From the NCBI RefSeq assembly GCF_001194135.2, contig NC_068981.1:132426020-132464407 (forward strand): a stretch of DNA of 38,388 nucleotides, written 5' to 3'. This document shows positions 11,429 through 37,277 of the stretch, one piece after another. The translations under genes were made by a program, and so were the position numbers. The notes under the pieces were generated by a model that was not told the origin of the DNA, ran no database searches, and saw nothing but the letters and a program-made list of their open reading frames with translations. Position 1 is the stretch's first letter; the number at the start of each line of letters is the position of its first letter. Origin of the DNA: Octopus bimaculoides. Lineage: Eukaryota.

Positions 11429-13030
11429 ACTGGTGAGCTGAAGTTTGATTATTGAGTTGCTGTTGAAATATTGTTTTTTTTTTAATTGTTGTAGTGTTCA
11501 TCGAACACTTTGGTTTTTGCTGCCCTGTGACACAGAGAGGAGAGTAAGCAAAGGAAAAAAAATGGAAGAGATTAGTTCTTCAGATTACAGTTACACTGAG
11601 GTGTCCGATTCTGAGCAGTCAGACACCTCGTGGTCCAACAGGAATAGAAACTTCGCAGAGGTGGCTAAAGTAGCAGAGAGTAATATGGATTTGAACGAGT
11701 GGAAGAAATACTACAAAATAATGTAAAGGGATGAAACAAAGGTGGAAGTAACCGCGCCAATGGAGATAATTGATAACAGAACGAAATGTACGGTAGTGTA
11801 CAAAACACACTCAGTAGCTGAAGGAAGAATTAAAGAGATGCCGACGAATCAAGTAGAGAAAGTACTAAGGCTCGTATGGAAGGATATTAGGTTTTTAACA
11901 AGAAGAGGCAGTAAATTTGGTACAAGTAAAGTCCAATTTATTGATATATGCAGTGCATGTTTGAGTGCGGCAATACTATTAAAGATCAAAGAAGTAATGA
12001 TGTTGCCAATATATGGTAGAAATAGTGCGATAAGAGTCAACATAGAAGGAATCCCCCCCCCCCAGACGTCGACGTGGCCTGGACAGTAGCCGTGGTCTTG
12101 CTAGGTAACGAGGAAGAGATAACGGTTGTCCAGGCCACCAAGACGGAAGCAAGGAACTAGAAAGGGCAATCCCTAAATATGGTGATATGGGGACCGAAGG
12201 TTAATATAGAAGAGTTGCCGGAAACAATAGTGTTTGACGACAATGGTAGTCAGAGTAGAGGGCAGGATACCCAGATGCTACAAGTGTGGCCAGAAAGGTC
12301 ACATTAGAGNNNNNNNNNNNNNNNNNNNNNNNNNNNNNNNNNNNNNNNNNNNNNNNNNNNNNNNNNNNNNNNNNNNNNNNNNNNNNNNNNNNNNNNNNNN
12401 NNNNNNNNNNNNNNNNNNNNNNNNNNNNNNNNNNNNNNNNNNNNNNNNNNNNNNNNNNNNNNNNNNNNNNNNNNNNNNNNNNNNNNNNNNNNNNNNNNNN
12501 NNNNNNNNNNNNNNNNNNNNNNNNNNNNNNNNNNNNNNNNNNNNNNNNNNNNNNNNNNNNNNNNNNNNNNNNNNNNNNNNNNNNNNNNNNNNNNNNNNNN
12601 NNNNNNNNNNNNNNNNNNNNNNNNNNNNNNNNNNNNNNNNNNNNNNNNNNNNNNNNNNNNNNNNNNNNNCCTGTTGTTGGACGAGGACCAGAAAGGGAAA
12701 AAATGTTAAAATTCAAAAAAGGATTTATGATATGGCAAGTCGACCTGGACATTCATAAACTGCCGTAGAATATGAACGACACGTTTTTACTGAAGGAGTA
12801 CGGTGTTGATATTTTGGAAGGCTCCGGTTTCAAAAAGAAAAAAAAATGAACAGAGGTTTAAATGAAGTAACTCAGAGGTGGGGCTGAGGAAACTTCATTC
12901 CATTTCTCATTTTCATTGTCATTCATTATAACATACACTTTTCTTTTCTTTTTTTTTTTAATTGTTATGTGTCCCCACATGTGTTTGTGTTGTCCCATCT
13001 GTGTTGGCCCCTTGTAGGCAATAAAGAAAA
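11429..13030 (+). mobile_element. ORF1-only Tx1/L1-like element (HAL1-like; copy 2) with a complete 3' tail
   Basis: ATG at 11562 (MEEISSSDYSY...NFAEVA), RRGSKFG, EGIPP, knuckle RCYKCGQKGHIR before the gap, stop at ~12768. A ~260-nt 3' UTR ends gccccttgtaggcaataaagaaaaa. No ORF2 sequence is visible. Confidence 0.7.
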
Positions 13031-13057
13031 AGAAAAGTTACATTGCAAATACATTCG

Positions 13058-14658
13058 AATTTTATTGTTTGGTTTTGTGCTGTTAGTTTTCGCTGAAGGT
13101 GAGGAGATTGTTATTATTTTTTTTTTCTGACCCAGAAGGTAGGCTGGTCGTTTTAGATTTGACTTTCAGTTGTGGTACAGTGATCACAAGTTTGTCACCT
13201 GTGAGCAGAAACTAGATAAGTTACATAGTAGAGGCTCCGGTTACTGGAAACTCAATAAGTCCCTTTTGGCGATTGAGGATTACAGGAACCGGATTAAGTT
13301 GATGTTACAAAGGGCATTGACAGGTACCATCATTAACAATAAATGGTGGTACGCCCTAAAAAGAGCCATTAAATTTGAGTCTATAGCATAGGTTTAGTAG
13401 CTAGAGAACGTAGGAGGGAATTAGAATTAACCAAGGCCTTAGAGGAAGCAGTGGTGACTGCCAATGCATCTCAGGTGAAGGCTAACAGACTGGAATTAAA
13501 CCAGCACCTCGAAGAAAGCTGGTTTCGTTGAAGATCAGTGTTGGGTACATGGTTTACGGAGTGCCGTAAGGCCCTCCTACTGTTCCGTCGCTCGGGTAGT
13601 GCTAGCGGTTTTGGTACCACCGTGTCATTCTATAGCAAGTTGGTAGAGGCTGGAAACGATGATACCCTGGGGGAGACCCTGGGTCTCGATAATAATCAGT
13701 TAGACAGTCTGTTCCAAAGGACATTCGGGACGAGGGCTTTGGATAACTTCCAAAAATCTCTAACCTGGCAATGTTACCGAGGAGCCTTACCCGTTCGGGA
13801 TAAGCTCACCAGACACGGCCTGCCCGGTCCGTCGGCCTGTCCAAGATATGAGCAGGATAGAGAAACCGTCCTGCACGCTATTGTGCAGTGTTCGAAAGTG
13901 TCAGGAGTGTGTCAGAAGTATTGTCGGATGTAAGAAGAGTACAGCTGTCGTCTGAGTCAATTTTAAAAATTGACCCACCGGATTTCTTCANNNNNNNNNN
14001 NNNNNNNNNNNNNNNNNNNNNNNNNNNNNNNNNNNNNNNNNNNNNNNNNNNNNNNNNNNNNNNNNNNNNNNNNNNNNNNNNNNNNNNNNNNNNNNNNNNN
14101 NNNNNNNNNNNNNNNNNNNNNNNNNNNNNNNNNNNNNNNNNNNNNNNNNNNNNNNNNNNNNNNNNNNNNNNNNNNNNNNNNNNNNNNNNNNNNNNNNNNN
14201 NNNNNNNNNNNNNNNNNNNNNNNNNNNNNNNNNNNNNNNNNNNNNNNNNNNNNNNNNNNNNNNNNNNNNNNNNNNNNNNNNNNNNNNNNNNNNNNNNTTT
14301 TCATCTTTCACCTGAAAAGGAAAGTGGGGCTGGAGAGAAGATGCCTGTCGGAGAGGATATTTAAAGACAGATGGATGTGTGTATCGAGGGTGTTGGGTGT
14401 GAAAGACTCCTCGTGAACGTGCCATAAGGCTGATAAAAAGGGATAGGTAGCGAAACAGGGCTCGTGGAGTCGGAGCGTAACCTGTTCCTCTATCTCATTG
14501 TGTATGTATAATTGTCTTTTGTATTGTATTTTCATCCGTTTGTAATTTCATTCGATTTTATTGTAAACATTATAAATTTTTATTATCATCTGTGTGTCGG
14601 ACCCCATCAAAGCTGTGCTGTCCCCTTTATGCTGGCCTCTTGTGGGCAATAAAGAAAC
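13058..14658 (+). mobile_element. 5'-truncated, internally deleted Tx1/L1-like ORF2 remnant (APE pieces plus C-terminal zinc finger; RT missing) with 3' tail
   Basis: DPEGRLVVLD, YSDHKFV, GSGYWKLNKSLL (APE and linker), then LTWQCYRGALPVRDKL...CPRYEQDRETVLHAIVQC (zf-RVT-like). Tail gcctcttgtgggcaataaagaaac. 26-bp TSD gaaaagttacattgcaaatacattcg at 13032-13057 and 14660-14685. Confidence 0.88.
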
Positions 14659-16242
14659 AGAAAAGTTACATTGCAAATACATTCGCCGATGAAATATAAT
14701 TTCTCTCCTGTTACACCATATGCTACTTTATTTGATTTAAATAATTTCGGCTTACCGATTTTTGGCCATGTTTCTTCATTTATGATAGTGATGTCACTAC
14801 CCGTGTCTAATTGCATTTTAATACTAGTGGTTTCGATTCTCACCTTGAATTTTCTGTTCGTTGTACAAACTTTTCTCTAATGACAAACTATTTATTTTTT
14901 CTCGTTTGGTCCAATTTTTCGTCGTCTTAGTTCTGCAGTGCAATTTAATGTGTCCTGTATTCCCACAGCGAAAACACGGTTTTTTTTTGTTTTGTTTTTT
15001 TGAACGGACACTCTTTTCTTGGGTACCTATCATCACATGTCACACATGGGTTTATCTCCTGATGTATATTGTGTTTTTTGTGAAACACTTTATCCGTCTT
15101 CCGGCTCTTCTACAGTGGTTTTATCTGTAAACAGTTTCTGTGTTGGATTTCTTGTGTCGTTCCTTACTTTTAATATCACATCCCACTCTTCTGACAGTTT
15201 CTGGAGAGTTATAACCTGGTTCATTTCCAGCTTTGCGAGAATTTTTGTTCTGACTTCTGTATCCATTTTAGCAGTAAGTCTCTGAGCAAAAACCGGGAAA
15301 AAAAACCTTAAATTCAAACTACTTTTACATCAATAGATTGACGAATGCCAAACCAATCCTGCATTCGCATTCAATAATTTTCGATTTTATTTGCTTAACT
15401 TAACAATACGCGAAATTATTTTTCATTTTGGCCAGCTGTGTTAACACCTTTTTAATATAATTGCCACCTGGGCAAAAACGTTGCTTGCTCCCAATACCAG
15501 ACATTTAAAATCGATTGAAAAATACGCCAGTGTGCTGGTCAAATTATAATAACATCTGACATGAACTTTTTATAATTGGCAGATTGACTAATTCTTACCG
15601 ATTCTCTAATTAGGCAAATGCGTTGTTTAGCAGTGTTTTCACTTGAGTACATTTTGTTCAAGCGTATAAGAATGATTTATTCGATACTTCTCGACTTAGC
15701 TTTTATCTTCAATTTTCTTAAACTGGATACGTCTGCTATTAAGTTGCAGAAGTTTGGCAGTACAGTTAAAAATCATTTCTGCTTTACTTCTTAGATACAA
15801 TTTTCCCATAAATTTTTACAGCTTCATTTTTTGATGATTGAAATGTCAAACATTTTCTAACCGTTAAAGCAATTCTTTACGTCAACTTTTTAATGCGTCT
15901 CTATTAAAACCATCATAGCTTATGCCTAACTGAAAACGATAGACGATCTCTTATCATTTAGCTGCATGGTTATTCACTACTGTCATTTCTAATCAATTTA
16001 CCGATATTGTCCTTCAAAGCTGCATGCTTTTTTTGAAATGTTTGATTATTTTTTTCTTATTTATCGTTATTCATTTGTTATTATAATAACAGATAAAGAT
16101 TGATACTTCGTTCAAAAACCTTAACGTTTTACTTGCAGAGATGGGTTCAAGTTGCAAAAGACTATACTTTCGTTAAACTTAGTATGTGCATTTTAAAAAA
16201 ATCTCATGACGTTTGGCTTAGTAAAAACCATCTTTACAGATA

Positions 16243-18607
16243 ATGCCTGACCGAAAACGATCAATGCTCTGTTCCAAAAGGAATGCCCTCCTAAAACAGC
16301 GAAAAAGGAAGTTGTGTTCACAGGTACGTTTTTCAACATTCATGTAATTTCGATTTTGCTTCCACACATTCTCGTGTATCCCATTTAAATATTGCACTTT
16401 CATATGTGCTCTACTATTCCTTTCAGGGAACACCAGAAGTAAGAGAGGCCCGTCTTGCTGCTCAGCGTAGTCGTGATCAACGCTCACTACTTGAGGAGTC
16501 AGCAGAAACAAGGCAGGCCCATCTTGCTGTCCAGCGTAGTTGTGATCAACGCTCACTACTTGAGGATCCTGTTGAAGCAAGGCAGGCCCGTCTTGCTTCC
16601 ATGCGTATTCGAAATCAGCGCTCACTCCTTAAGGAGTCAGAAGAAGCAAGGTAGGCCCGTCTTGCTTCCATGCGTAGTCGTGATCAACGCTCAATCCTTG
16701 AGGAGACTGTTGAAGCAAGAGAGGCTCGCGTTGCTGCCCAACATAGTCCATGCCAGCGATCGAGTCTTGAGGAATCATCGGAGGCTAGGGAAAACAGGTT
16801 GGCAGGTCGACGCCAAAGAAATGTTGCTGCTGCAAGGAGCGCATTTTGGATGAGAACTGGATTCAGATACAGTCCTGCAGATGATTTCTCCATTCACCTG
16901 GACGTGACTCTTGGTCAAATGGACAGGGAATGCTAATTTTGTCATGCTAAGAAGTGGGCTGGTGAGGCAGTTGGTCTTTGTTGTTCCGGGGGCAAGGTTT
17001 GACTTCAGCCGCTCACAAATCCACTTAAAGTTCTGAAAACTCTTCTCCTCGACAGCTCCGACCACGCCAAGAAATTCCGAAAAAGCATTTGGAGATATAA
17101 CTCCTGCTTCGCTATGACCTCTTTTGGCGTAAAGAACGTCCACGACAAACATAACATCAACAACGTCAATATTGATGGCAATTTGGCGATTAATCCTGCA
17201 AAAAAGAAGGAGAAACATTACACCTTCAAGATTCAAGGTCAGTGCTATCATCGCATGGGCAGTCTTTGTCCTCAGCCTACCAAGGAACCTAGGTTCTTGT
17301 AGATTTTCTTCATGGGTTGTTCAAACGCAGAAGTTATCCAGCGGTGCAACAGAAATTCAGATGTTGACGCAGCAATTGTTTCTGAGCTCCAAGATATGCT
17401 TCATGCAACACACCCTTATGTCAACGAATTCAAGAATGCGTTGGAGCTTTTGGAAGCCCAACCTGAGCTAAAATTGATAAGTAAAGTTGACAGTTGACCT
17501 GCTGGTGAGCACCCGCGACGTTTTAATGTTCCAACTACCAACGAGGTTGCAGCAATCATAGCTGGCAAAGAAAATGGGAAGCGTGATATTGTCCTCCAGC
17601 ACCGCGATAGCCGACTGTCCTTTGTTTCGGAAACCCATCGGTCGTACGACTGCCTGCAGTACTCCCTAATGTTTCTCTTTGGAGAGGATGGTTACAACTT
17701 TGATATACGCCATGTTGATCCAATCAGGGGTGCTGAATTAACAAAGGCTGTTTCCTGCAAGGAATTCTATGCCTTCAGTCTTATGGTCAGAGACGGTCAG
17801 TTCAACCAACTGCTGCGGTACAAGGAAGTCACAAATCAATTCTTGGTTGACATGTTTGCCAAGATTGAAGGTGAAAGGCTTCTTTATATTCGTCAAAATC
17901 AAAAGAAATTGCGTGTGGACCAATATCTTACCGTTAAGGATCATGTCCAGCTGTACGGTAATGCAAGAAACATTGGCCTTCCGGTGATACTTCCTTCCAG
18001 CCATACCGGGTCTCCACGGTACATGCATCAGCGGACACAGGATGCCATGGCATATGTCCGCAAATTTGATGGACCTGACCTCTTCATCACCTTTACGTGC
18101 AACTCAACTTGGCGAGAGATAAAGGAAAACTTATTCGAGAGCCAGGCGGCATGCGACAAACACGACTTAGTGGCCAGAGTTTTCCACGGCAAATTGCAGA
18201 AGTTAATGTGGCTATTGAAACATGGCACTGTCTACGGAAAACTGAACGCGTGGATGTACACTGTAGAATGGCAAAAGCGGGGGTCTTCCACACGCCCATA
18301 TACTGATTTGGTGCCAAGAAAAAATCAGACCTACGGACGTCGATCAGATTATATGTGCAGAGCTGCTTGACCCTAATGTCGACTTGGAGCTATTCAAAAT
18401 CGTGTTGGTGCATATGATACACGGGCTTTGTGGTGTCTTGAATCCTAATTCTCCATGTATGGAAAACATTAGATGTTCAAAGCACTATCCCAAGGCTTTC
18501 AACAGGTCTACATGTACTGGTATTGATGGCTGCCCCATTTACCGATGACGTGCCCCTGACTTTGGAGGAATTTCGGCGAAAAAAAGGATAAAGGGCAAAG
18601 ACACATA
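16243..18607 (+). mobile_element. Helitron RepHel pseudogene, N-terminal half (STPR-like repeats, Zn-binding region, Rep motifs 1-2), truncated before Rep motif 3 and the helicase
   Basis: One frame from 16427 with scattered stops: C*FCHAKKWAGEAVGLCCSGGKV, YNSCFAMTSFG, FKIQGQCYHRMGSL, HPRRFNVPTTNEVA, YDCLQYSLMFLFGEDG, ILPSSHTGSPRYM, PDLFITFTCN, VEWQKRG then (frameshift at the G-run 18279-18283) LPHAHILIW (HUH). Confidence 0.95.
16446..16800 (+). repeat. 69-bp (23-aa) coding tandem repeat, 5 units plus a partial, STPR-like
   Basis: Units start at 16446, 16515, 16584, 16653 and 16722 (ARLAAQRSRDQRSLLEESAETRQ-like). Confidence 0.9.
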
Positions 18608-18609
18608 TT

Positions 18610-19705
18610 CCATTCTATTATGTTCTTATATCTATATGTACACACAAATTTGCTGTCTTCCAACTCGTTACCATCCAGAATAGCTCCTTATTGTCCTCGT
18701 CCGCCATTATGCAAGCGTAGTTTACTTTATGGGGAGGGGAATTTTTTGTGCTTTGTTGTGTCTGCGATTCTTTTTAGCTTGTCTAGGAGGGGAATGGGTA
18801 GGTTCGGTGTCTGTAGGAAGAGGGTAGGTCTCAGAGGGTATTGGTGGGGTGAGCAAGGTTTGAGGTTCCACATTACACCTTTTCTCTTTTTCCTTTTTCC
18901 ATCTGCCACTCTCCATTCTTCTTCTCTTTCCTCCTCTTTTTCTTTTTCCTCCTCTTGCTTCTTTTCCGGCATTTCTTCTGTTGTTCACTTCTGTAGAGGG
19001 CAGTATGCTCTAATGTGGCCTTTCAATACCAGTTCACCAATTGACACTGCCTCCGCCAAATTTTCTAGTGTCTCCACCGCAGCTTGTATATACACTGAGT
19101 CGTCCGTTTTTGTGGCTTGGAGGATGGCCACCTCCTTCTCGCTACCCAGGAGAATAGCCGCCACGACCCAAACCACACCAATTTCTGGTGGAATTCCTTC
19201 CACCCTTATCCTTGATGTCCTTCTTCTCATATATGTGGGTAGAAGGATCGATCATTTTATCGGTTTTTATTGTTCCCGTTGCATTCTCTATTGCTTTTGC
19301 TTCCGACTTGAATAGTACTATTATGGATCCAAATTTACTTCCTCTGGCCAGATACGTAATATCTGGCCAGACCGAGCATAATGCCTTTTCAATGATCCTT
19401 TCTTCCACACGTTCAATTCTCCTGTTTTCCATCGAGTATACGTTATATATCACAGTTTTTCTGTCAATCTGTTCCATTTTATTCTGAGGTGGTGTCAGCT
19501 TAACGTCACCACCTACTCTGGTAGTCATTCTTCCGTAACTTTCCATGTTGGAGAGGTCTATCTCCCTCTTCCTCACCTCCGCTGCCTCTGCAAAACTTTT
19601 CTTCTCTAAAACTTTATCCATTCTTCCGATGGCACGAACCAACTCCTCCTCCGAAGAGGAGAATTCGGAACCGCTAAATTCCGAATAGTACATTTTCGTT
19701 GCTTA
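18610..19705 (-). mobile_element. Tx1/L1-like ORF1 (copy 3); no 3' tail, abutting the Helitron break
   Basis: ORF 19142-19693 MYYSEFSGSEFSSSEEE...SFAEAA...TVIYNVYS...LARGSKFG; frameshift to RIRVEGIPPEIGVVWV...KGHIRAYC (first two knuckle Cys deleted); acidic/basic C-terminus. Confidence 0.75.
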
Positions 19706-19711
19706 TCTCTC

Positions 19712-20020
19712 GATAATATCTCCTCATGTCACAGCTTTGCGATGTTCCACTACCCTTATTTTGAGGGGGCGCCATGTTTCGCTTTGCATAACCTACCACA
19801 GCTGCATGGGATGGAGTACACGCAGTTTTTGGTCATATTCTCTTCTATTGGTGGTTTTACTCGAAGGAGATATTTGCGAAGTGTTGTATTACTCTTGAAT
19901 ACTGTCCGGATGCCATATGGGCCGCATATCTTTTGTATCTTTTCGGAGACAGTTTATTGGTTTCACCCTCTCTTTTCTTCATAATTGGAGTAGATAGTAT
20001 GTTTTGGGGGTAAGCCCTAA
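19712..20020 (-). mobile_element. Penelope-like element fragment: RT-EN linker and N-terminal half of the GIY-YIG endonuclease
   Basis: Minus strand reads AYPQNILSTPIMKKREGETNKL, then (shift) SEKIQKICGPYGIRTVFKSNTTLRKYLLRVKPPIEENMTKNCVYSIPCSCGRLCK, then (shift) ETWRPLKIRVVEHRKAV. This fits the PLE pattern VY.IPC.CG..Y.GET.R.L..R..EH. Confidence 0.85.
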
Positions 20021-20441: not shown

Positions 20442-20908
20442 AATAAATGATATGTGTGTGTGTGTATGTGTGTATGTGTGTGTGTGTATATGTATGTATA
20501 CTGACGCACAAACGCGCGCACGCGAGCTTGTCACGTCACTTGACGTGTTATATATCAAGATCATTATTTTGGTTTTAAGTTGTAGAGATTTTGTCACGTG
20601 CTGGCAGTTTCGAATATTTAAACGAGATTATATCACGTTACGTACCTTATGCGTAATAAAAAAAACAGAATATATAAAAGAGTGAGTGCAAAGGACGGAA
20701 AGACATGAGCGAAATTAGAAATGTAAGTGCAGCTGTTCGGGTGGGTATGTGTGTTTGCGCTGCCATTTTAACACAGGGATGCACTGGGCAGTTTCCCGGA
20801 TGTCCAACGGGTGTACGTGTATAATACCAATCTATGTACGTTGTAACTTACTGTCGATAAATAAATATTAAAGGGTCCAATGCAGTCATTTGCCCAAGAG
20901 TCCTATAA

Positions 20909-21742
20909 TAGGGGTTCTCAAACATATTTTATCTATGGACTCCTTTGATTACTATTTTATTCTGGTGGGCCCCCCATAGCCATTCGATGTCTAAAAACTA
21001 GCTTTCTACAAACGTCATTGAAAACTCTTGTTTTGTTTTTCATACATTAACTTATGTAGATTGAACTACGTAAAATGTGAGAGAGATAAACCTAGCTGTT
21101 TCTTGCAATAAATTCATCTAAAGCAAAATGTTTTCAAGGACCCTTAAAATACTACTGTAGATTCCCAAATTTACTATTTTGCTTGTAGGGATCCCCTTTG
21201 GTTACTATCTTATTCTGGTGGACACCCATAGCCATTTGACGTTTAAAATTTTGTTTTATAGATACTTCATTCAAAATTCCTATTTTGTTTTTCACATATC
21301 AACTAGGTTGAACTATGTAAAATGTTAGAGAAAGAAACCCAGCTGTTTCTTGCAATACATACCAATACATACATCTAAAGTAAAATCATTCCAGGTCCTC
21401 TTATAATACCATTGTGAATCTCCAATTTACTGTTTTTCAAAGCATGGACCCCTTCTGTTAACTATTTTATTCTGGTGGGCCCTCATAGCCATTCGATGTT
21501 TAAAAACTTGTTTTATAGAAACTTCTTAGAAAATTCCTATTTTGTTTTTTACACATTAACCTGTGTAGGATGAACGTTCGAGAAAGAAACCTAACTGGTT
21601 CTTGCAATACATACATACCAATACATACATCCAAAGTAAAATTTTTTCATGGGCCCTTAAAATACTATTAGGGAACCCTAACTTACTATTTTGTTGCGTG
21701 GACCCACAAAAATCTTATATGGACCCCGGTTGAGAACCATTA
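20909..21742. mobile_element. hAT (Charlie-like) MITE with three internal ~255-bp tandem units
   Basis: Ends taggggttctcaaac ... ggttgagaaccatta; 8-bp flanks tcctataa / gtctataa. Units begin ggactcctttgattactattttattctggtgg at ~20937, ~21189 and ~21447. Confidence 0.75.
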
Positions 21743-21879
21743 GTCTATAATGTTAAGACAGCATTGTGTATAGGAGGGAGCGAGAAAGAGTAAGATTGAG
21801 AGAAAAGGAGCAAAAAAAAAAAGAGATAGAGATGCTGAGACAAAATGTATGAACTAAGTCTGAATAACCAATATTCGTT

Positions 21880-22735
21880 TCGAATATTGGCACAAGGCCA
21901 GCAATTTCCGTGTGGTGAGGGAGCCGTAGCTGAAAGGCAAGTCAACCTCGGCGGAAATTGAACTCGGAACGTGAAGACGAACGAAATGCCGCAAAGCATT
22001 TTGTCCGACGTGCTAACGATCATGTCAGCTTGCCGCCGTTGTTGGTCGCCAATATTACTGTACGTATAAGGACAGTGAGCTGGCAAAATCGTTAGCACGC
22101 CAGGCAAAATGCTTTGCGGCATTTCGTCTGCTGTTACGTTCTGAGTTCAAATTCCGCCGAGGTCGACTTTGCCTTTCATCCTTTCGGGGTCGATAAATTA
22201 AGTACCAGTTACGCACTGGGGCTCGATGTAATCAACTTAATCCCTTTGTCTGACCTTGTTTGTCCCCTCTATGTTTAGCCCCTTGTGGGCAATAAAGAAA
22301 TAAGAATCGTTAGCACGCCAGGCAAAATGCTTAGCACCATTTCGTGTGTCTTCACGTTCTGAGTTCAGATTCTGCCGATATCTACTTTGCCTTTTATGTT
22401 TTGGGGTTCGATATAATAAATACCAGTTGAACACTGGGGTCGAGATAATCGACTCACCCCCTTTACTGAAATTACTGATCTTGCGCCAAAATTTGAAATC
22501 AATATTATTGTACATATTAGGGCGGCAAACTAGCAGAATCATTAGCACGCCGGGAAAAATGCTTAGCGGCATTTTGTCCGTCTTTACGCTCTGAGTCCAA
22601 CTTCCACAGAGGTTGACTTACCTTTATATTCTTTCGGGGTCGATAAAACAAGTATCAGTTGAGACCCACGGTCGAGTACTCAACTCATCCACTTCTCCTA
22701 AAATTGCTGGCGTTGTGCTAAAATTTGAAAGCAAT
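21880..22735. mobile_element. Cluster of four SINE family A copies: 21880-22037 (-), 22075-22304 (+), 22305-22500 (+), 22520-22735 (+)
   Basis: Repeated heads (gaatcgttagcacgcc...aaatgct), B boxes (gagttcaaattcc) and ggtcgactttgcctttcatcctttcggggtcgataaa modules. 28-bp TSD at 22087-22114 and 22305-22332. Confidence 0.9.
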
Positions 22736-22879
22736 GTTCCCATACATGTATTCGTGTCAATCACGACCTTCAATAACCAATTAGTGTCTTGTTCAAGCAA
22801 TGGGAAGGGTGTGCAACAAAATTTGTTTTTAGTTGCAAAGTGAAAGTGAAATTATAAAACAAGCACAATACACGGGAAC

Positions 22880-36243: not shown

Positions 36244-36278
36244 TACTTAAACCCCAGAGGTGACATTAACTTTACATT

Positions 36279-36422
36279 GTGAGTTCAAATTCCGCCGAGG
36301 TCGACTTTGCCTTTCATCCTTTTGGGGTCGATAAATTAAGTACCAGTTGCGTACTGGGGGTCGATCTGATCGACTGGCCTCTCCCTCAAAATTTCAGGCC
36401 TTGTGCCTAGAGTAGAAAAAAA
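36279..36422 (+). mobile_element. 5'-truncated SINE family A with a third tail type (ggccttgtgcctagagtagaaa)
   Basis: gagttcaaattccgccgaggtcgactttgcctttcatccttttggggtcgataaattaagtacc. Confidence 0.9.
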
Positions 36423-36779: not shown

Positions 36780-37277
36780 TCATCATCATCATCATCATTG
36801 CCTTTGCGCAGCTTCTAACGCTGGAGATGTACTGCGGTGTCAGCTGTTCACTACCAGTGAACTAAGGTAACACCTCTTATTTTTCGAGCCCCTTCCGGAG
36901 TATTCGAGTGGTTCCAGGCAGTGCTATTTTCTGCAAGTGCTCCACCCTTATTGCAACCCCTATTTATTCCATGTACTTCTCGAGATTTTTACTCACTGTT
37001 CCCAAAGCTCCGACAATTATTTGTACTACTACCACCTTTTTCATCGACCACAACTGCTTAACCTCCCAAGCTAACCTGTCATATCTATCGACTTTTCTTT
37101 CTTCCTTATCGCATACCTTGTTGTCAGCTGGGCANNNNNNNNNNCATATCTATCGACTTTTCTTTCTTCCTTATCGCATACCTTGTTGTCAGCTGGGCAT
37201 GCTATATCTATGATCCAGCATAGTTTGTTTTCTTTCTCAATTAAGACTATGTCTGACTTCCTATTCTGAAAACTCAC
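36780..37277 (-). mobile_element. R4/Dong-like LINE 3' fragment (RLE plus 3' UTR) ending in (GAT)n
   Basis: NRKSDIVLIEKENKLCWIIDIACPAD...RYDRLAWEVKQLWSMKKVVVVQIIVGALGTV...LQKIALPGTTRILRKGLEK*. Confidence 0.88.

What the first reader, a model, noticed from the sequence alone, without database searches (positions are those of the whole stretch)
22075..22332. SINE with a Tx1-derived tail inserted into the A-box of its own family, rebuilding a Pol III promoter (self-targeting loop)
Seen: a 190-bp unit (22115-22304) is flanked by an identical 28-bp TSD aatcgttagcacgccaggcaaaatgctt (22087-22114 and 22305-22332) that lies in a family A SINE head. Its 3' end (tgtcccctctatgtttagccccttgtgggcaataaagaaa) matches the LINE tails at ~12990-13029 (22 of the last 23 nt) and ~14620-14657. 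The sequence after the three tails is GAATCGTTAGC or GAAAAGTTACA, and Tx1 ORF1 copy 1 directly follows a SINE head containing GAAACGTTAGC (494-545, -). Inference: a Tx1-like endonuclease targets GAA(A/T)(A/C)GTTA in the SINE A-box. The inserted unit lacks an A box but carries the B box, so insertion fuses it to the host A box and regenerates both a promoter and a new target, which should build tandem SINE arrays. A tail-sharing SINE/Tx1 pair whose target is the SINE itself would be unusual.
Basis: partly seen in the sequence, partly recalled or inferred. Interest (0 to 1): 0.8.

Follow-up and report, generated by a model that had tools for sequence, protein, structure and literature searches.

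The report
SINE inserted into another SINE's head
An octopus short retroposon (SINE) that borrows the 3' tail of a neighbouring L1-like LINE has copied itself into the front end of an older SINE, duplicating 28 bases; this is ordinary retroposon biology, and the proposed "self-targeting loop" is not demonstrated.

Summary
AATCGTTAGCACGCCAGGCAAAATGCTT occurs exactly twice (22087-22114, 22305-22332), flanking a 190-bp SINE body. That body ends in a ~60-nt tail sharing 22 of its last 23 nt with two LINE 3' ends in the window. The nested-retroposition reading is well supported. The SINE's 5' junction is in register with the host head, as homology-guided joining of a longer cDNA would give, so the claim that the inserted unit lacks an A box is unsupported. 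Argonauta SINEs with the same tail have their own heads.

The LINE is L1-superfamily (APE, RT, zf-RVT; ORF1 with RRM and CCHC). Tx1 membership could not be tested. The shared tail holds a hairpin with covariation, conserved across octopods.

A target preference is likely. The two independent targets begin AGAATCGTTA and AGAAAAGTTA, one nick site was used twice, and Argonauta relatives show a TCTATT junction, re-used sites and tandem arrays. However, the second target lies in an LTR-retrotransposon protease gene, and related tails elsewhere have unrelated flanks. A SINE-specific, promoter-rebuilding loop remains a hypothesis resting on one or two cases. This is a new member of a known kind, of modest interest.

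The parts
22050..22086 (+). 5' leader and first ~20 nt of the host SINE head, containing the first half of the A-box-like motif (TGGCAA, from 22081)
   Evidence: Aligns with the leader and head of other full-length copies. Motif-level A-box match only; no tRNA call.
22087..22114 (+). Target-site duplication, upstream copy (host SINE head positions ~21-48)
   Evidence: Exact 28-mer, found twice in the window.
22115..22304 (+). Inserted SINE as now visible: rest of head, B-box-like motif (22144-22154), conserved body, and LINE-type tail (about 22241-22300) plus TAAG
   Evidence: 91% identical to the copy at 36272-36375 over the body. Tail matches the LINE tails at 22/23. The junction at 22114/22115 is in register with contiguous SINE copies.
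22278..22290 (+). Tail hairpin GCCC-CTTGT-GGGC, followed by AATAAAGAAA (22291-22300)
   Evidence: On 16 LINE and SINE tails from three species, 92% of cells pair versus 67% in shuffles and about 40% when slid; 3 of 4 pairs show changes on both sides.
22305..22332 (+). Target-site duplication, downstream copy
   Evidence: Exact 28-mer immediately after the tail.
22333..22503 (+). Remainder of the host SINE (unit 2), with the other tail type (...CTTGCGCCAAAATTTGAAATCAAT...)
   Evidence: BLAST gives 73-81% identity to other copies. Tail alignment.
22504..22750 (+). Third SINE (unit 3), head-to-tail with unit 2; its complete head directly follows unit 2's tail
21870..22037 (-). Inverted SINE copy, head-to-head with the composite unit; carries the same GCTTTGCGG variant in a contiguous head
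13058..14657 (+). LINE B: 5'-truncated and internally deleted L1-like LINE (APE C-end with the SDH motif, ORF2 C-terminal zf-RVT region, 3' UTR, tail); N gap at 13991-14297
   Evidence: Translations. 64% identity to an O. sinensis protein and to PF13966-bearing relatives. Tail.
13031..13057 (+). 27-bp target-site duplication of LINE B, upstream copy; it directly follows the tail of LINE A
   Evidence: Exact 27-mer, 2 matches versus 0 expected.
14659..14685 (+). 27-bp target-site duplication of LINE B, downstream copy; lies in an LTR-retrotransposon protease ORF on the minus strand
11445..13029 (+). LINE A: ORF1 (RRM-like plus CCHC; ATG at 11562), N gap 12310-12669, 3' region and tail ending at 13029; 5' boundary uncertain
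494..541 (-). SINE head fragment (with AGAAACGTTAGC) that ends at ...AAATGCTTAGCGG and abuts the 5' region of another LINE ORF1 copy (395-12, minus strand)
   Evidence: The break point lies within 5 nt of the right end of the 28-bp duplication when mapped onto the SINE head.

Best explanation
This is a nested retroposition. The window is octopus DNA; the closest protein relative of its LINE is from Octopus sinensis.

An L1-superfamily LINE (ORF1 with RRM and CCHC; ORF2 with APE endonuclease, RT and a C-terminal zf-RVT zinc finger) ends in a ~60-nt tail. That tail carries a conserved 4-bp hairpin with loop CUUGU, followed by AAUAAAGAAA. A SINE with the common octopus head and body has acquired this tail and is therefore mobilised by that LINE's machinery.

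In this event the bottom strand of an older SINE, which has a different tail, was nicked inside its A-box-like motif (TGGCA|[G/A]AATCG). The SINE RNA was reverse-transcribed from the nick. The top strand was cut 28-30 bp downstream, giving the 28-bp duplication.

Because the cDNA is homologous to the target head, the 5' end was joined in register, either by annealing at insertion or by later head-head recombination. The upstream composite (host leader and A-box-like motif, then incoming B-box-like motif, body and LINE tail) therefore reads as an intact SINE. The downstream host remnant has lost its first ~20 nt.

The machinery has a short sequence preference at the nick: AGAA..GTTA here, TCTATT in Argonauta. 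This preference makes it re-use good sites and produce tandem or nested copies. The SINE head happens to contain such a site.

Shown directly: the duplication, the tail sharing, the LINE domains, the hairpin covariation, the second 27-bp duplication, and nick-site re-use.

Inferred: the order of nicks, the homology-guided 5' joining, and recognition of the hairpin by the RT.
For: - Exact 28-bp repeat immediately abutting the tail, whereas the flanking SINE units are about 77% identical (p about 6e-4).
- The same tail sits on two LINE 3' ends in the window at 22/23. It also sits on an O. sinensis LINE and on a near full-length Argonauta LINE that has ORF1, APE, RT, zf-RVT and a 17-bp TSD.
- The Argonauta RT is closest to human L1 ORF2p (E=7e-43, versus 1e-22 for R2). 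Its APE domain matches L1 endonuclease.
- LINE B has an exact 27-bp TSD, about the same length as the SINE's 28 bp. LINE A's tail abuts that TSD, so the same nick site was used twice.
- The tail hairpin shows covariation.
- The two independent targets start AGAATCGTTA and AGAAAAGTTA. Only 0.057% of window 10-mers match that well.
- In Argonauta, 29 of 40 tails are followed by TCTAT (<=1 mismatch). TSDs of 13-20 bp start with (C)TATT. Tandem copies sandwich a TSD. Tails are followed by a SINE head within 60 nt in 9 of 40 cases, against 2.3% for random positions (p=2.5e-7).
- The 5' junction is in register, and the same junction sequence occurs in a contiguous copy.
- Literature: Tx1-group LINEs and partner SINEs share targets and form tandem insertions that sandwich a TSD (PMC4494074).
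Against: - There is only one such SINE event in the window, with no empty-site allele or orthologue to prove the insertion.
- The 28-bp segment is 'cleaner' than the rest of unit 2: 1 change from the head consensus, all CpG-type, where about 4-5 would be expected. This gives a rough p of 0.02-0.09 by my own count. It hints at a more complex history, such as conversion or a transduced flank.
- Argonauta TSDs are 13-20 bp, not 27-28 bp.
- LINE A's own upstream TSD copy was not found. Only a 16/21 similar stretch lies at about 11400-11430, and there is an N gap inside LINE A.
- This draft assembly contains artefactual duplications at N gaps, although none lies near these repeats.
Confidence: 0.72

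Rival explanations
1. A Tx1-like endonuclease specifically recognises GAA(A/T)(A/C)GTTA in the SINE A box. The tail-bearing SINE is a headless unit (B box only) that depends on landing in a SINE head to regain a Pol III promoter. Each insertion regenerates promoter and target, giving a self-targeting loop that builds tandem arrays.
For: - The motif AGAAWMGTTA follows all three tails in the window and occurs 6 times against 0.67 expected. The other three occurrences are all in SINE heads.
- A second LINE copy's 5' region abuts a SINE head that breaks within 5 nt of the same head position.
- Nick-site re-use and tail-to-head adjacency are enriched.
- Borrowing a promoter from a transcribed target is an accepted idea for R2 and has been discussed for SINEU (PMC4494074).
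Against: - The three tails represent only two independent target sequences, and one of them is an LTR-retrotransposon protease gene rather than a SINE.
- AGAA may simply be microhomology with the RNA 3' end. Given AGAA, a match of >=8/10 has p of about 0.045.
- A gapped comparison of the two whole TSDs is not better than shuffles.
- B-like tails in L001, L010, L016 and L018 have unrelated flanks.
- The in-register 5' junction is the expected product of homology-guided joining and gives no evidence for a headless source.
- SINEs with this tail in Argonauta have complete heads.
- Other tandem junctions are complete tail to complete head, which this model does not produce.
- Tx1 clade placement was not tested.
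Confidence: 0.12
2. This is a template-switch chimera or concatemer. During one TPRT event the RT copied a family-A SINE RNA, stopped about 20 nt short of its 5' end, and jumped to the 3' end of a tail-B SINE RNA. The result is two SINEs joined head-to-tail. On this view the 28-bp identity reflects conserved head sequence in two source genes, not a target duplication.
For: - Direct tail-to-head concatenation without a spacer TSD is common in these SINEs. Examples are the Argonauta array at L013 4900-5360 with a 157-bp period, and the unit 2/unit 3 and 2300/2240 junctions in the window.
- The 28-mer is close to the head consensus, as a 'young' sequence would be.
Against: - Unit 2 is about 23% diverged from unit 1 and from every other copy, and shows many CpG decays. 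It is hard to reconcile this with both units being the same age.
- A 28/28 identity next to such divergence is unlikely.
- The repeat length matches the 27-bp TSD of LINE B, which carries the same tail.
Confidence: 0.08
3. The pattern arose by local unequal recombination or gene conversion between neighbouring SINEs in the cluster (four copies within 900 bp), or it is an assembly artefact of a repeat-rich draft.
For: - The locus is a SINE cluster with direct and inverted copies.
- The assembly contains exact artefactual duplications flanking N gaps, at 9487/9815 (305 bp) and 37080/37145 (55 bp).
Against: - The repeat begins exactly at the end of a retroposon tail, and a complete extra body and tail lie between the two copies.
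- Unequal crossover between tandem SINEs would not place a LINE tail against position 21 of a head.
- No N gap is adjacent to the repeat.
- An independent 27-bp repeat flanks a LINE with the same tail.
Confidence: 0.05

Closest known systems
SINEU / Tx1-Mar in crocodilians (Kojima 2015, PMC4494074)
   Same: A SINE and a Tx1/L1-group LINE are mobilised by the same machinery and share a target preference for another repeat. Tandem insertions sandwich a TSD. 5' extensions and chimeras arise by template switch or recombination. The paper also discusses dependence on the target's promoter.
   Different: In crocodilians, 13-90% of hundreds of copies sit in one Mariner family, which is a statistically established specificity. 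Here there are two independent targets, one a SINE head and one an LTR-element gene. The partnership here is shown by a shared 3' tail hairpin. The target would be the SINE's own family, not a DNA transposon.
Stringent-type LINE/SINE pairs with a common 3' tail (Ohshima & Okada 'common tail' model; eel UnaL2/UnaSINE1, Kajikawa & Okada 2002; recalled from established literature and cited within PMC4494074 and PMC5786205)
   Same: The SINE's 3' ~60 nt derive from the partner LINE's 3' UTR end. They contain a conserved stem-loop next to a short terminal motif, and several SINE families with different heads share the tail.
   Different: The partner here is an L1-superfamily element with zf-RVT, not an L2- or RTE-type LINE. 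RT recognition of the hairpin is inferred from covariation only.
Homology-assisted resolution or gene conversion when a SINE inserts into a pre-existing SINE (Alu gene-conversion models, e.g. Kass, Batzer & Deininger 1995; recalled from memory)
   Same: The incoming cDNA is homologous to the target element, so a junction forms in register and yields a chimeric but continuous element.
   Different: Here a full extra body and tail plus a 28-bp TSD are retained, rather than a partial replacement of the resident element.
Position-specific integration at Pol III genes (Dictyostelium TRE5/TRE3 non-LTR elements; yeast Ty3; recalled from memory)
   Same: Retroelements accumulate next to tRNA-type promoters. 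In Argonauta, tails lie within 60 nt upstream of SINE heads about 10 times more often than random positions do.
   Different: There is no evidence here for tethering to TFIIIB or TFIIIC. The enrichment is explained more simply by re-use of nick sites kept in TSDs and by concatenation.

Membership tests
SINE (tRNA-type, SINE2) | Head derived from a tRNA gene, with internal Pol III A and B boxes | tested here: inconclusive
   Motif-level matches exist: TGGCAAAATCG at 22081-22091 fits TRGCNNARNNG, and AGTTCAAATTC at 22144-22154 fits RGTTCRANNYC. ARAGORN finds no tRNA and the Rfam tRNA model gives no hit at E<=10.
SINE (any) | Short, non-coding, many dispersed copies, with a 3' tail shared with a partner LINE and flanking TSDs | tested here: met
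   At least 8 copies in 38 kb. Tail matches the LINE tails at 22/23. A 28-bp TSD here and a 14-bp TSD for a copy in L001.
L1 superfamily (L1/Tx1 group) non-LTR retrotransposon | ORF2 with an N-terminal APE endonuclease and an RT most similar to L1-type RTs; an ORF1 RNA-binding protein | tested here: met
   Window LINE B retains the APE C-end (SDH motif) and the ORF2 C-terminus. The Argonauta homologue has APE (L1-EN hits), RT (L1 ORF2p at 7e-43 versus R2 at 1e-22), zf-RVT PF13966 and an ORF1 with RRM-like and CCHC motifs.
Tx1 clade specifically | RT phylogeny places the element with Tx1L, Keno, Kibi and Koshi rather than with L1 proper | not testable with these tools
   No Tx1 reference sequences or names were available. 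The PDB holds only human L1 ORF2p and L1-EN loop chimeras.
Tx1 clade specifically | Pronounced target-sequence specificity, with most copies in one repeat or gene family | tested here: inconclusive
   Two independent window targets share AGAA..GTTA and one site was used twice. But the targets are a SINE head and an LTR-element gene. Four B-like tails elsewhere have other flanks. In Argonauta only a 5-7-nt junction motif is conserved.
Stringent LINE-SINE partnership through a 3' stem-loop | A conserved hairpin in the shared tail, maintained by compensatory changes | tested here: met
   A 4-bp stem with loop CTTGT: 92% of cells paired versus 67% (shuffles) and about 40% (slid); 3 of 4 pairs have double-sided changes. 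RT binding was not tested.
   There is no evidence for a headless source: the junction is in register and Argonauta tail-mates have their own heads. One of two independent targets in the window is a SINE head. None of about 44 related tails outside the window sits inside a SINE A box.

The most novel reading that the evidence does not exclude
Across octopods, this L1/Tx1-like LINE and the several SINE families that carry its tail hairpin may preferentially re-enter SINE 5' regions. The head, or the TSD just upstream of it, would be the favoured landing site. Targeting could work through endonuclease sequence preference, through homology between a read-through 3' flank and SINE heads, or through the Pol III complex. 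SINE heads would then act both as landing pads and as donated promoters, and SINE arrays would grow by self-insertion.
Probability: 0.15. Interest if true: 0.6.

Novelty: new member of a known kind. Interest (0 to 1): 0.3.

Why it matters
SINEs are among the most abundant repeats in octopus genomes and are often embedded in octopus transcripts (PMC9115989). Knowing which LINE moves them, and where they land, helps in three ways: annotating cephalopod genomes, dating SINE bursts, and judging which copies can still be transcribed.

This analysis gives a concrete partner for one SINE tail type: an L1-superfamily LINE with a conserved 3' hairpin shared across Octopus and Argonauta. It also shows that the machinery re-uses nick sites and makes tandem or nested copies.

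If the stronger idea were confirmed genome-wide, with SINE heads as preferred targets, it would add a SINE to the list of repeats targeted by Tx1-like elements. It would also explain SINE clustering. That needs whole-genome counts that could not be made here.

Tried and rejected
- **ORF1 homologue search.** No hits, so no extra loci with LINE 5' ends were obtained.
- **Public metagenome scan for the tail (CYCTTGTRGGCAATAAAGAAA).** Five hits, all chance matches in unrelated sequence.
- **tRNA detection in the SINE heads.** ARAGORN and Rfam, on the whole window and on a focused 931 bp at E<=10, found nothing apart from microsatellite noise.
- **Alignment of the 5' regions of the three ORF1 copies.** They do not align. 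These are different LINE families, so ORF1 copy 1 next to a SINE head cannot be assumed to carry the same tail.
- **TSD search for the O. sinensis LINE in L001.** The only match belongs to a local minisatellite, so the target is undetermined.
- **Logan contigs encoding relatives.** These are other subfamilies or species with decayed tails. They were useful only as counter-examples for the flank motif.
- **Gapped comparison of the 27-bp and 30-bp TSDs.** It scored no better than shuffles, so the similarity is confined to the first 10 nt.
- **Upstream TSD of LINE A.** Not found; only a 16/21 similar stretch exists.
- **The 22-bp repeat at 20951/21461.** It turned out to be a ~255-bp satellite, not a TSD.
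- **Assembly artefact.** Rejected as the main explanation, because the artefactual duplications in this assembly sit at N gaps and these repeats do not.
- **Extending the window leftwards.** Not attempted, because the window's own ORFs did not appear in the protein collection.
Full report
**What the window is**

The window is a draft eukaryotic assembly with ten N gaps. It is full of interspersed repeats. The closest protein relative of its LINE fragment is an Octopus sinensis protein (64% identity). Further relatives come from Argonauta hians. I therefore treat the window as octopus DNA.

**Checking the observation**

- The 28-mer AATCGTTAGCACGCCAGGCAAAATGCTT occurs exactly twice, at 22087-22114 and 22305-22332.
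- The 190 bp between the two copies are a SINE body. It ends in ...TGTCCCCTCTATGTTTAGCCCCTTGTGGGCAATAAAGAAA followed by TAAG.
- BLAST finds SINE copies at 494-541(-), 1762-1930(-), 21870-22037(-), 22060-22304, 22305-22515, 22516-22750 and 36270-36375. Another lies at about 2170-2360(-).
- Outside the 28-mer, unit 1 (22060-22304) and unit 2 (22305-22515) are about 77% identical. Other heads differ from the 28-mer at 3-5 positions. A 28/28 identity from shared ancestry alone has p of about 6e-4 to 1.5e-2.
- The last 23 nt of the tail match the 3' ends at 13029 and 14657 at 22/23 each.
- The quoted flanks, and the SINE head fragment next to ORF1 copy 1, are all as described.

One caveat applies to the labels. 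'A box' and 'B box' are motif-level calls only. Neither ARAGORN nor the Rfam tRNA model recognises these heads.

The two LINE tails are each followed by the same 27 bp, AGAAAAGTTACATTGCAAATACATTCG, at 13031-13057 and 14659-14685 (2 matches, 0 expected). The sequence between them (13058-14657, 'LINE B') encodes three recognisable parts:
- the C-terminal end of an APE endonuclease (WYSDHKF...);
- the C-terminal zinc-finger region of ORF2;
- a 3' UTR ending in the tail.

The 27-mer is therefore LINE B's target-site duplication. 'LINE A' (ORF1 from 11562, tail ending at 13029) abuts the upstream copy, so the same nick position was used twice.

The host of both LINEs is an LTR-retrotransposon protease ORF on the minus strand (DTGSD..., with a gag CCHC upstream). 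It is not a SINE.

Two conclusions follow:
- A TSD of 27 bp on a LINE and 28 bp on a SINE, both with the same tail, argues that one machinery made both. It also argues that the 28-mer is a true TSD.
- The three flanks after the three tails are only two independent target sequences.

**The LINE and its tail**

- Relatives of the window's ORF2 fragment carry PF13966 (zf-RVT).
- In Argonauta locus L012 there is a near full-length element (6886-12648). It has an ORF1 (RRM-like plus CCHC), an APE domain, RT, zf-RVT, a 3' UTR and the same tail, flanked by a 17-bp TSD.
- Its RT is closest to human L1 ORF2p (E=7e-43, versus 1e-22 for R2). Its APE matches L1 endonuclease.
- The tail also ends a LINE in O. 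sinensis (L001).

The tail is therefore the genuine 3' end of an L1-superfamily LINE. Placement in the Tx1 clade proper could not be tested.

The tails of LINEs and of several SINE families in Octopus and Argonauta share a 4-bp stem with loop CTTGT, followed by AAWWRAGAAA. Stem pairs co-vary (GCCC/GGGC, GGCC/GGCT, TGGC/GCCA, AGGC/GCCT). On 16 tails, 92% of cells pair, against 67% in shuffles and about 40% when slid. Three of four pairs show changes on both sides. This is the signature of a stringent LINE-SINE partnership through a 3' stem-loop.

**How the SINE-in-SINE structure arose**

The simplest account is target-primed reverse transcription of a tail-B SINE RNA, from a bottom-strand nick in the host head (TGGCA|[G/A]AATCG). 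The top-strand cut would lie 28-30 bp downstream.

The visible 5' end of the insert (22115) continues the host head without any shift of register. The very same junction sequence, GCTTTGCGGCATTTCG, occurs in a contiguous copy at 22037-21870(-). A random 5' truncation would be in register about once in 250.

A cDNA that still contains head sequence can anneal to the homologous top-strand 3' end and join in register automatically. A full-length insertion followed by head-head recombination would give the same product. Either way, the structure gives no evidence that the source element lacks an A box.

Argonauta SINEs with this tail, from two different head families, have complete heads of their own.

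After the event, the upstream composite has the A-box-like and B-box-like motifs plus the LINE tail. The downstream remnant has lost the first half of the A-box-like motif.

**Is there target specificity?**

Evidence for a preference:
- The two independent targets begin AGAATCGTTA (or AAAATCGTTA in the upstream copy) and AGAAAAGTTA. Only 0.057% of window 10-mers match AGAATCGTTA at >=8/10.
- AGAAWMGTTA occurs 6 times against 0.67 expected. Three follow the tails and three lie in other SINE heads.
- One site was hit twice.
- A LINE of another ORF1 family abuts a SINE head that breaks within 5 nt of the same head position.
- In Argonauta, 29 of 40 tails are followed by TCTAT (<=1 mismatch), and positions from +8 onward are unconstrained.
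- Argonauta TSDs of 13-20 bp begin with (C)TATT in both copies.
- There are clear cases of sequential insertions sandwiching a TSD.
- A SINE head follows a tail within 60 nt in 9 of 40 cases, against 2.3% for random positions (p=2.5e-7).

Evidence against the specific model:
- AGAA may be microhomology with the RNA 3' end. Given AGAA, a match of >=8/10 has p of about 0.045.
- The two TSDs as wholes are not more alike than shuffles.
- B-like tails elsewhere are followed by TTGGATG (L001), TCCAATT (L010), (ATC)n (L016) and TCATTGT (L018).
- Most tandem junctions join a complete tail to a complete head: unit 2/unit 3, 2300/2240, and the 157-bp array in L013. Insertion into the A box would not produce these.

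My reading is a sequence-preferring machinery of the kind known for Tx1-group elements. The SINE head contains one acceptable site among many. I do not read it as a dedicated self-targeting loop.

**Caveats**

- The 28-mer is closer to the head consensus than the rest of unit 2 would predict. It has one CpG-type change where about 4-5 would be expected (rough p of 0.02-0.09, my own count). This leaves room for conversion or for a transduced head segment.
- LINE A's own upstream TSD copy is missing, and an N gap lies inside LINE A.
- The assembly has artefactual duplications at N gaps, though none is near the repeats discussed here.
- No genome-wide count was possible. The protein-based route gave only about 60 kb of Octopus DNA and 43 kb of Argonauta DNA. 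The metagenome scan gave only chance hits.

**Comparison with what is known**

- Tail sharing between LINEs and SINEs, and tail exchange, are textbook (PMC5786205).
- Target-preferring Tx1 LINEs whose partner SINEs share the target, with tandem insertions sandwiching a TSD, are described for crocodilian SINEU/Tx1-Mar. Tx1 families that target DNA transposons and LTR retrotransposons are also known (PMC4494074).
- The same paper discusses reliance on the target's promoter.
- What may be new here is the particular partnership: an octopod L1-like LINE with a CUUGU hairpin tail serving several SINE families. A SINE head as one of its landing sites may also be new.

**Verdict**

The nested insertion with a 28-bp TSD is well supported (confidence about 0.72). 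The self-targeting, promoter-rebuilding loop is not shown (about 0.12). Novelty: new member of a known kind. Interest: 0.3.

Noticed in passing
window 9487-9791 vs 9815-10119 (N gap 9792-9814); 37080-37134 vs 37145-37199 (N gap 37135-37144): Exact duplications of 305 bp and 55 bp flank short N gaps. These are almost certainly scaffolding or gap-closing artefacts of the draft assembly.
   Followed up: partly
window ~9815-15400, minus strand: An LTR retrotransposon with a gag CCHC knuckle (~14950), an aspartic protease DTGSD (~14800) and RT-like sequence (~10100-10790). It is interrupted by LINE A and LINE B inside the protease ORF.
   Followed up: partly
window 17669-18370 (+): A 233-aa ORF matching the Helitron transposase Helraiser (PDB 7LCC, E=1.6e-39), so this is a Helitron fragment.
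   Followed up: yes
window ~19700-19950, minus strand: Upstream of ORF1 copy 3, the sequence encodes ...CVYSIPCSCGR..., which resembles (from memory) the GIY-YIG endonuclease region of Penelope-like elements. ORF1 copy 3 therefore sits in another retroelement, not in a SINE.
   Followed up: no
window ~20900-21740: A tandem satellite-like repeat with a period of about 255 bp lies immediately upstream of the SINE cluster. It explains the 22-bp exact repeat at 20951/21461.
   Followed up: partly
window 22440-22530, 2230-2310(-), 1930-1990(-), 22030-22072: Full SINE heads are usually preceded directly by the end of the other tail type (...CCAAAATTTGAAA[G/T]CAATATTATTGTACATAT[A/T]AGG). Either this ~22-nt 'leader' is the true 3' end of that SINE and the copies are concatenated head-to-tail, or it is a re-used target. 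By eye, 3 of 9 assessable tails in the window are followed by a head within 30 nt.
   Followed up: partly
L013 4895-5360 (Argonauta hians): Three tRNA-like SINE units of 157 bp lie in a perfect head-to-tail array, joined by TCTATTT with no spacer TSD. The last two units are nearly identical. Template-jump concatenation or unequal crossover could explain this.
   Followed up: partly
L012 1440-2100, minus strand (Argonauta hians): The same target (TATTTATTTTCATTACA...) is present three times, separating successive SINE insertions. One SINE is also nested in another SINE's tail at ...GGC|TAATAGAG. This is repeated use of a single nick site.
   Followed up: partly
window 11395-11430 vs 13031-13057: Where LINE A's upstream TSD copy should lie, there is only a 16/21 similar stretch (AAAAAAGGCGCATCGCAAATATAACTGG versus AGAAAAGTTACATTGCAAATACATTCG). 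Possible causes are mis-scaffolding across the N gap at 12310-12669, or a more complex history. This is unexplained.
   Followed up: partly
L012 and L013, junction after the tail: In Argonauta the tail plus junction reads AATAGA-GAAA-TCTATT, a perfect 6-bp inverted repeat formed between the tail and the preferred target. It is not seen in Octopus, and its meaning is unknown.
   Followed up: no
L013 4847 and 11188; L016 2493: LINE-type tails ending AATAAAAGAA are followed directly by (TTA)n or (ATC)n microsatellites, suggesting microsatellite birth or targeting at these 3' ends.
   Followed up: no
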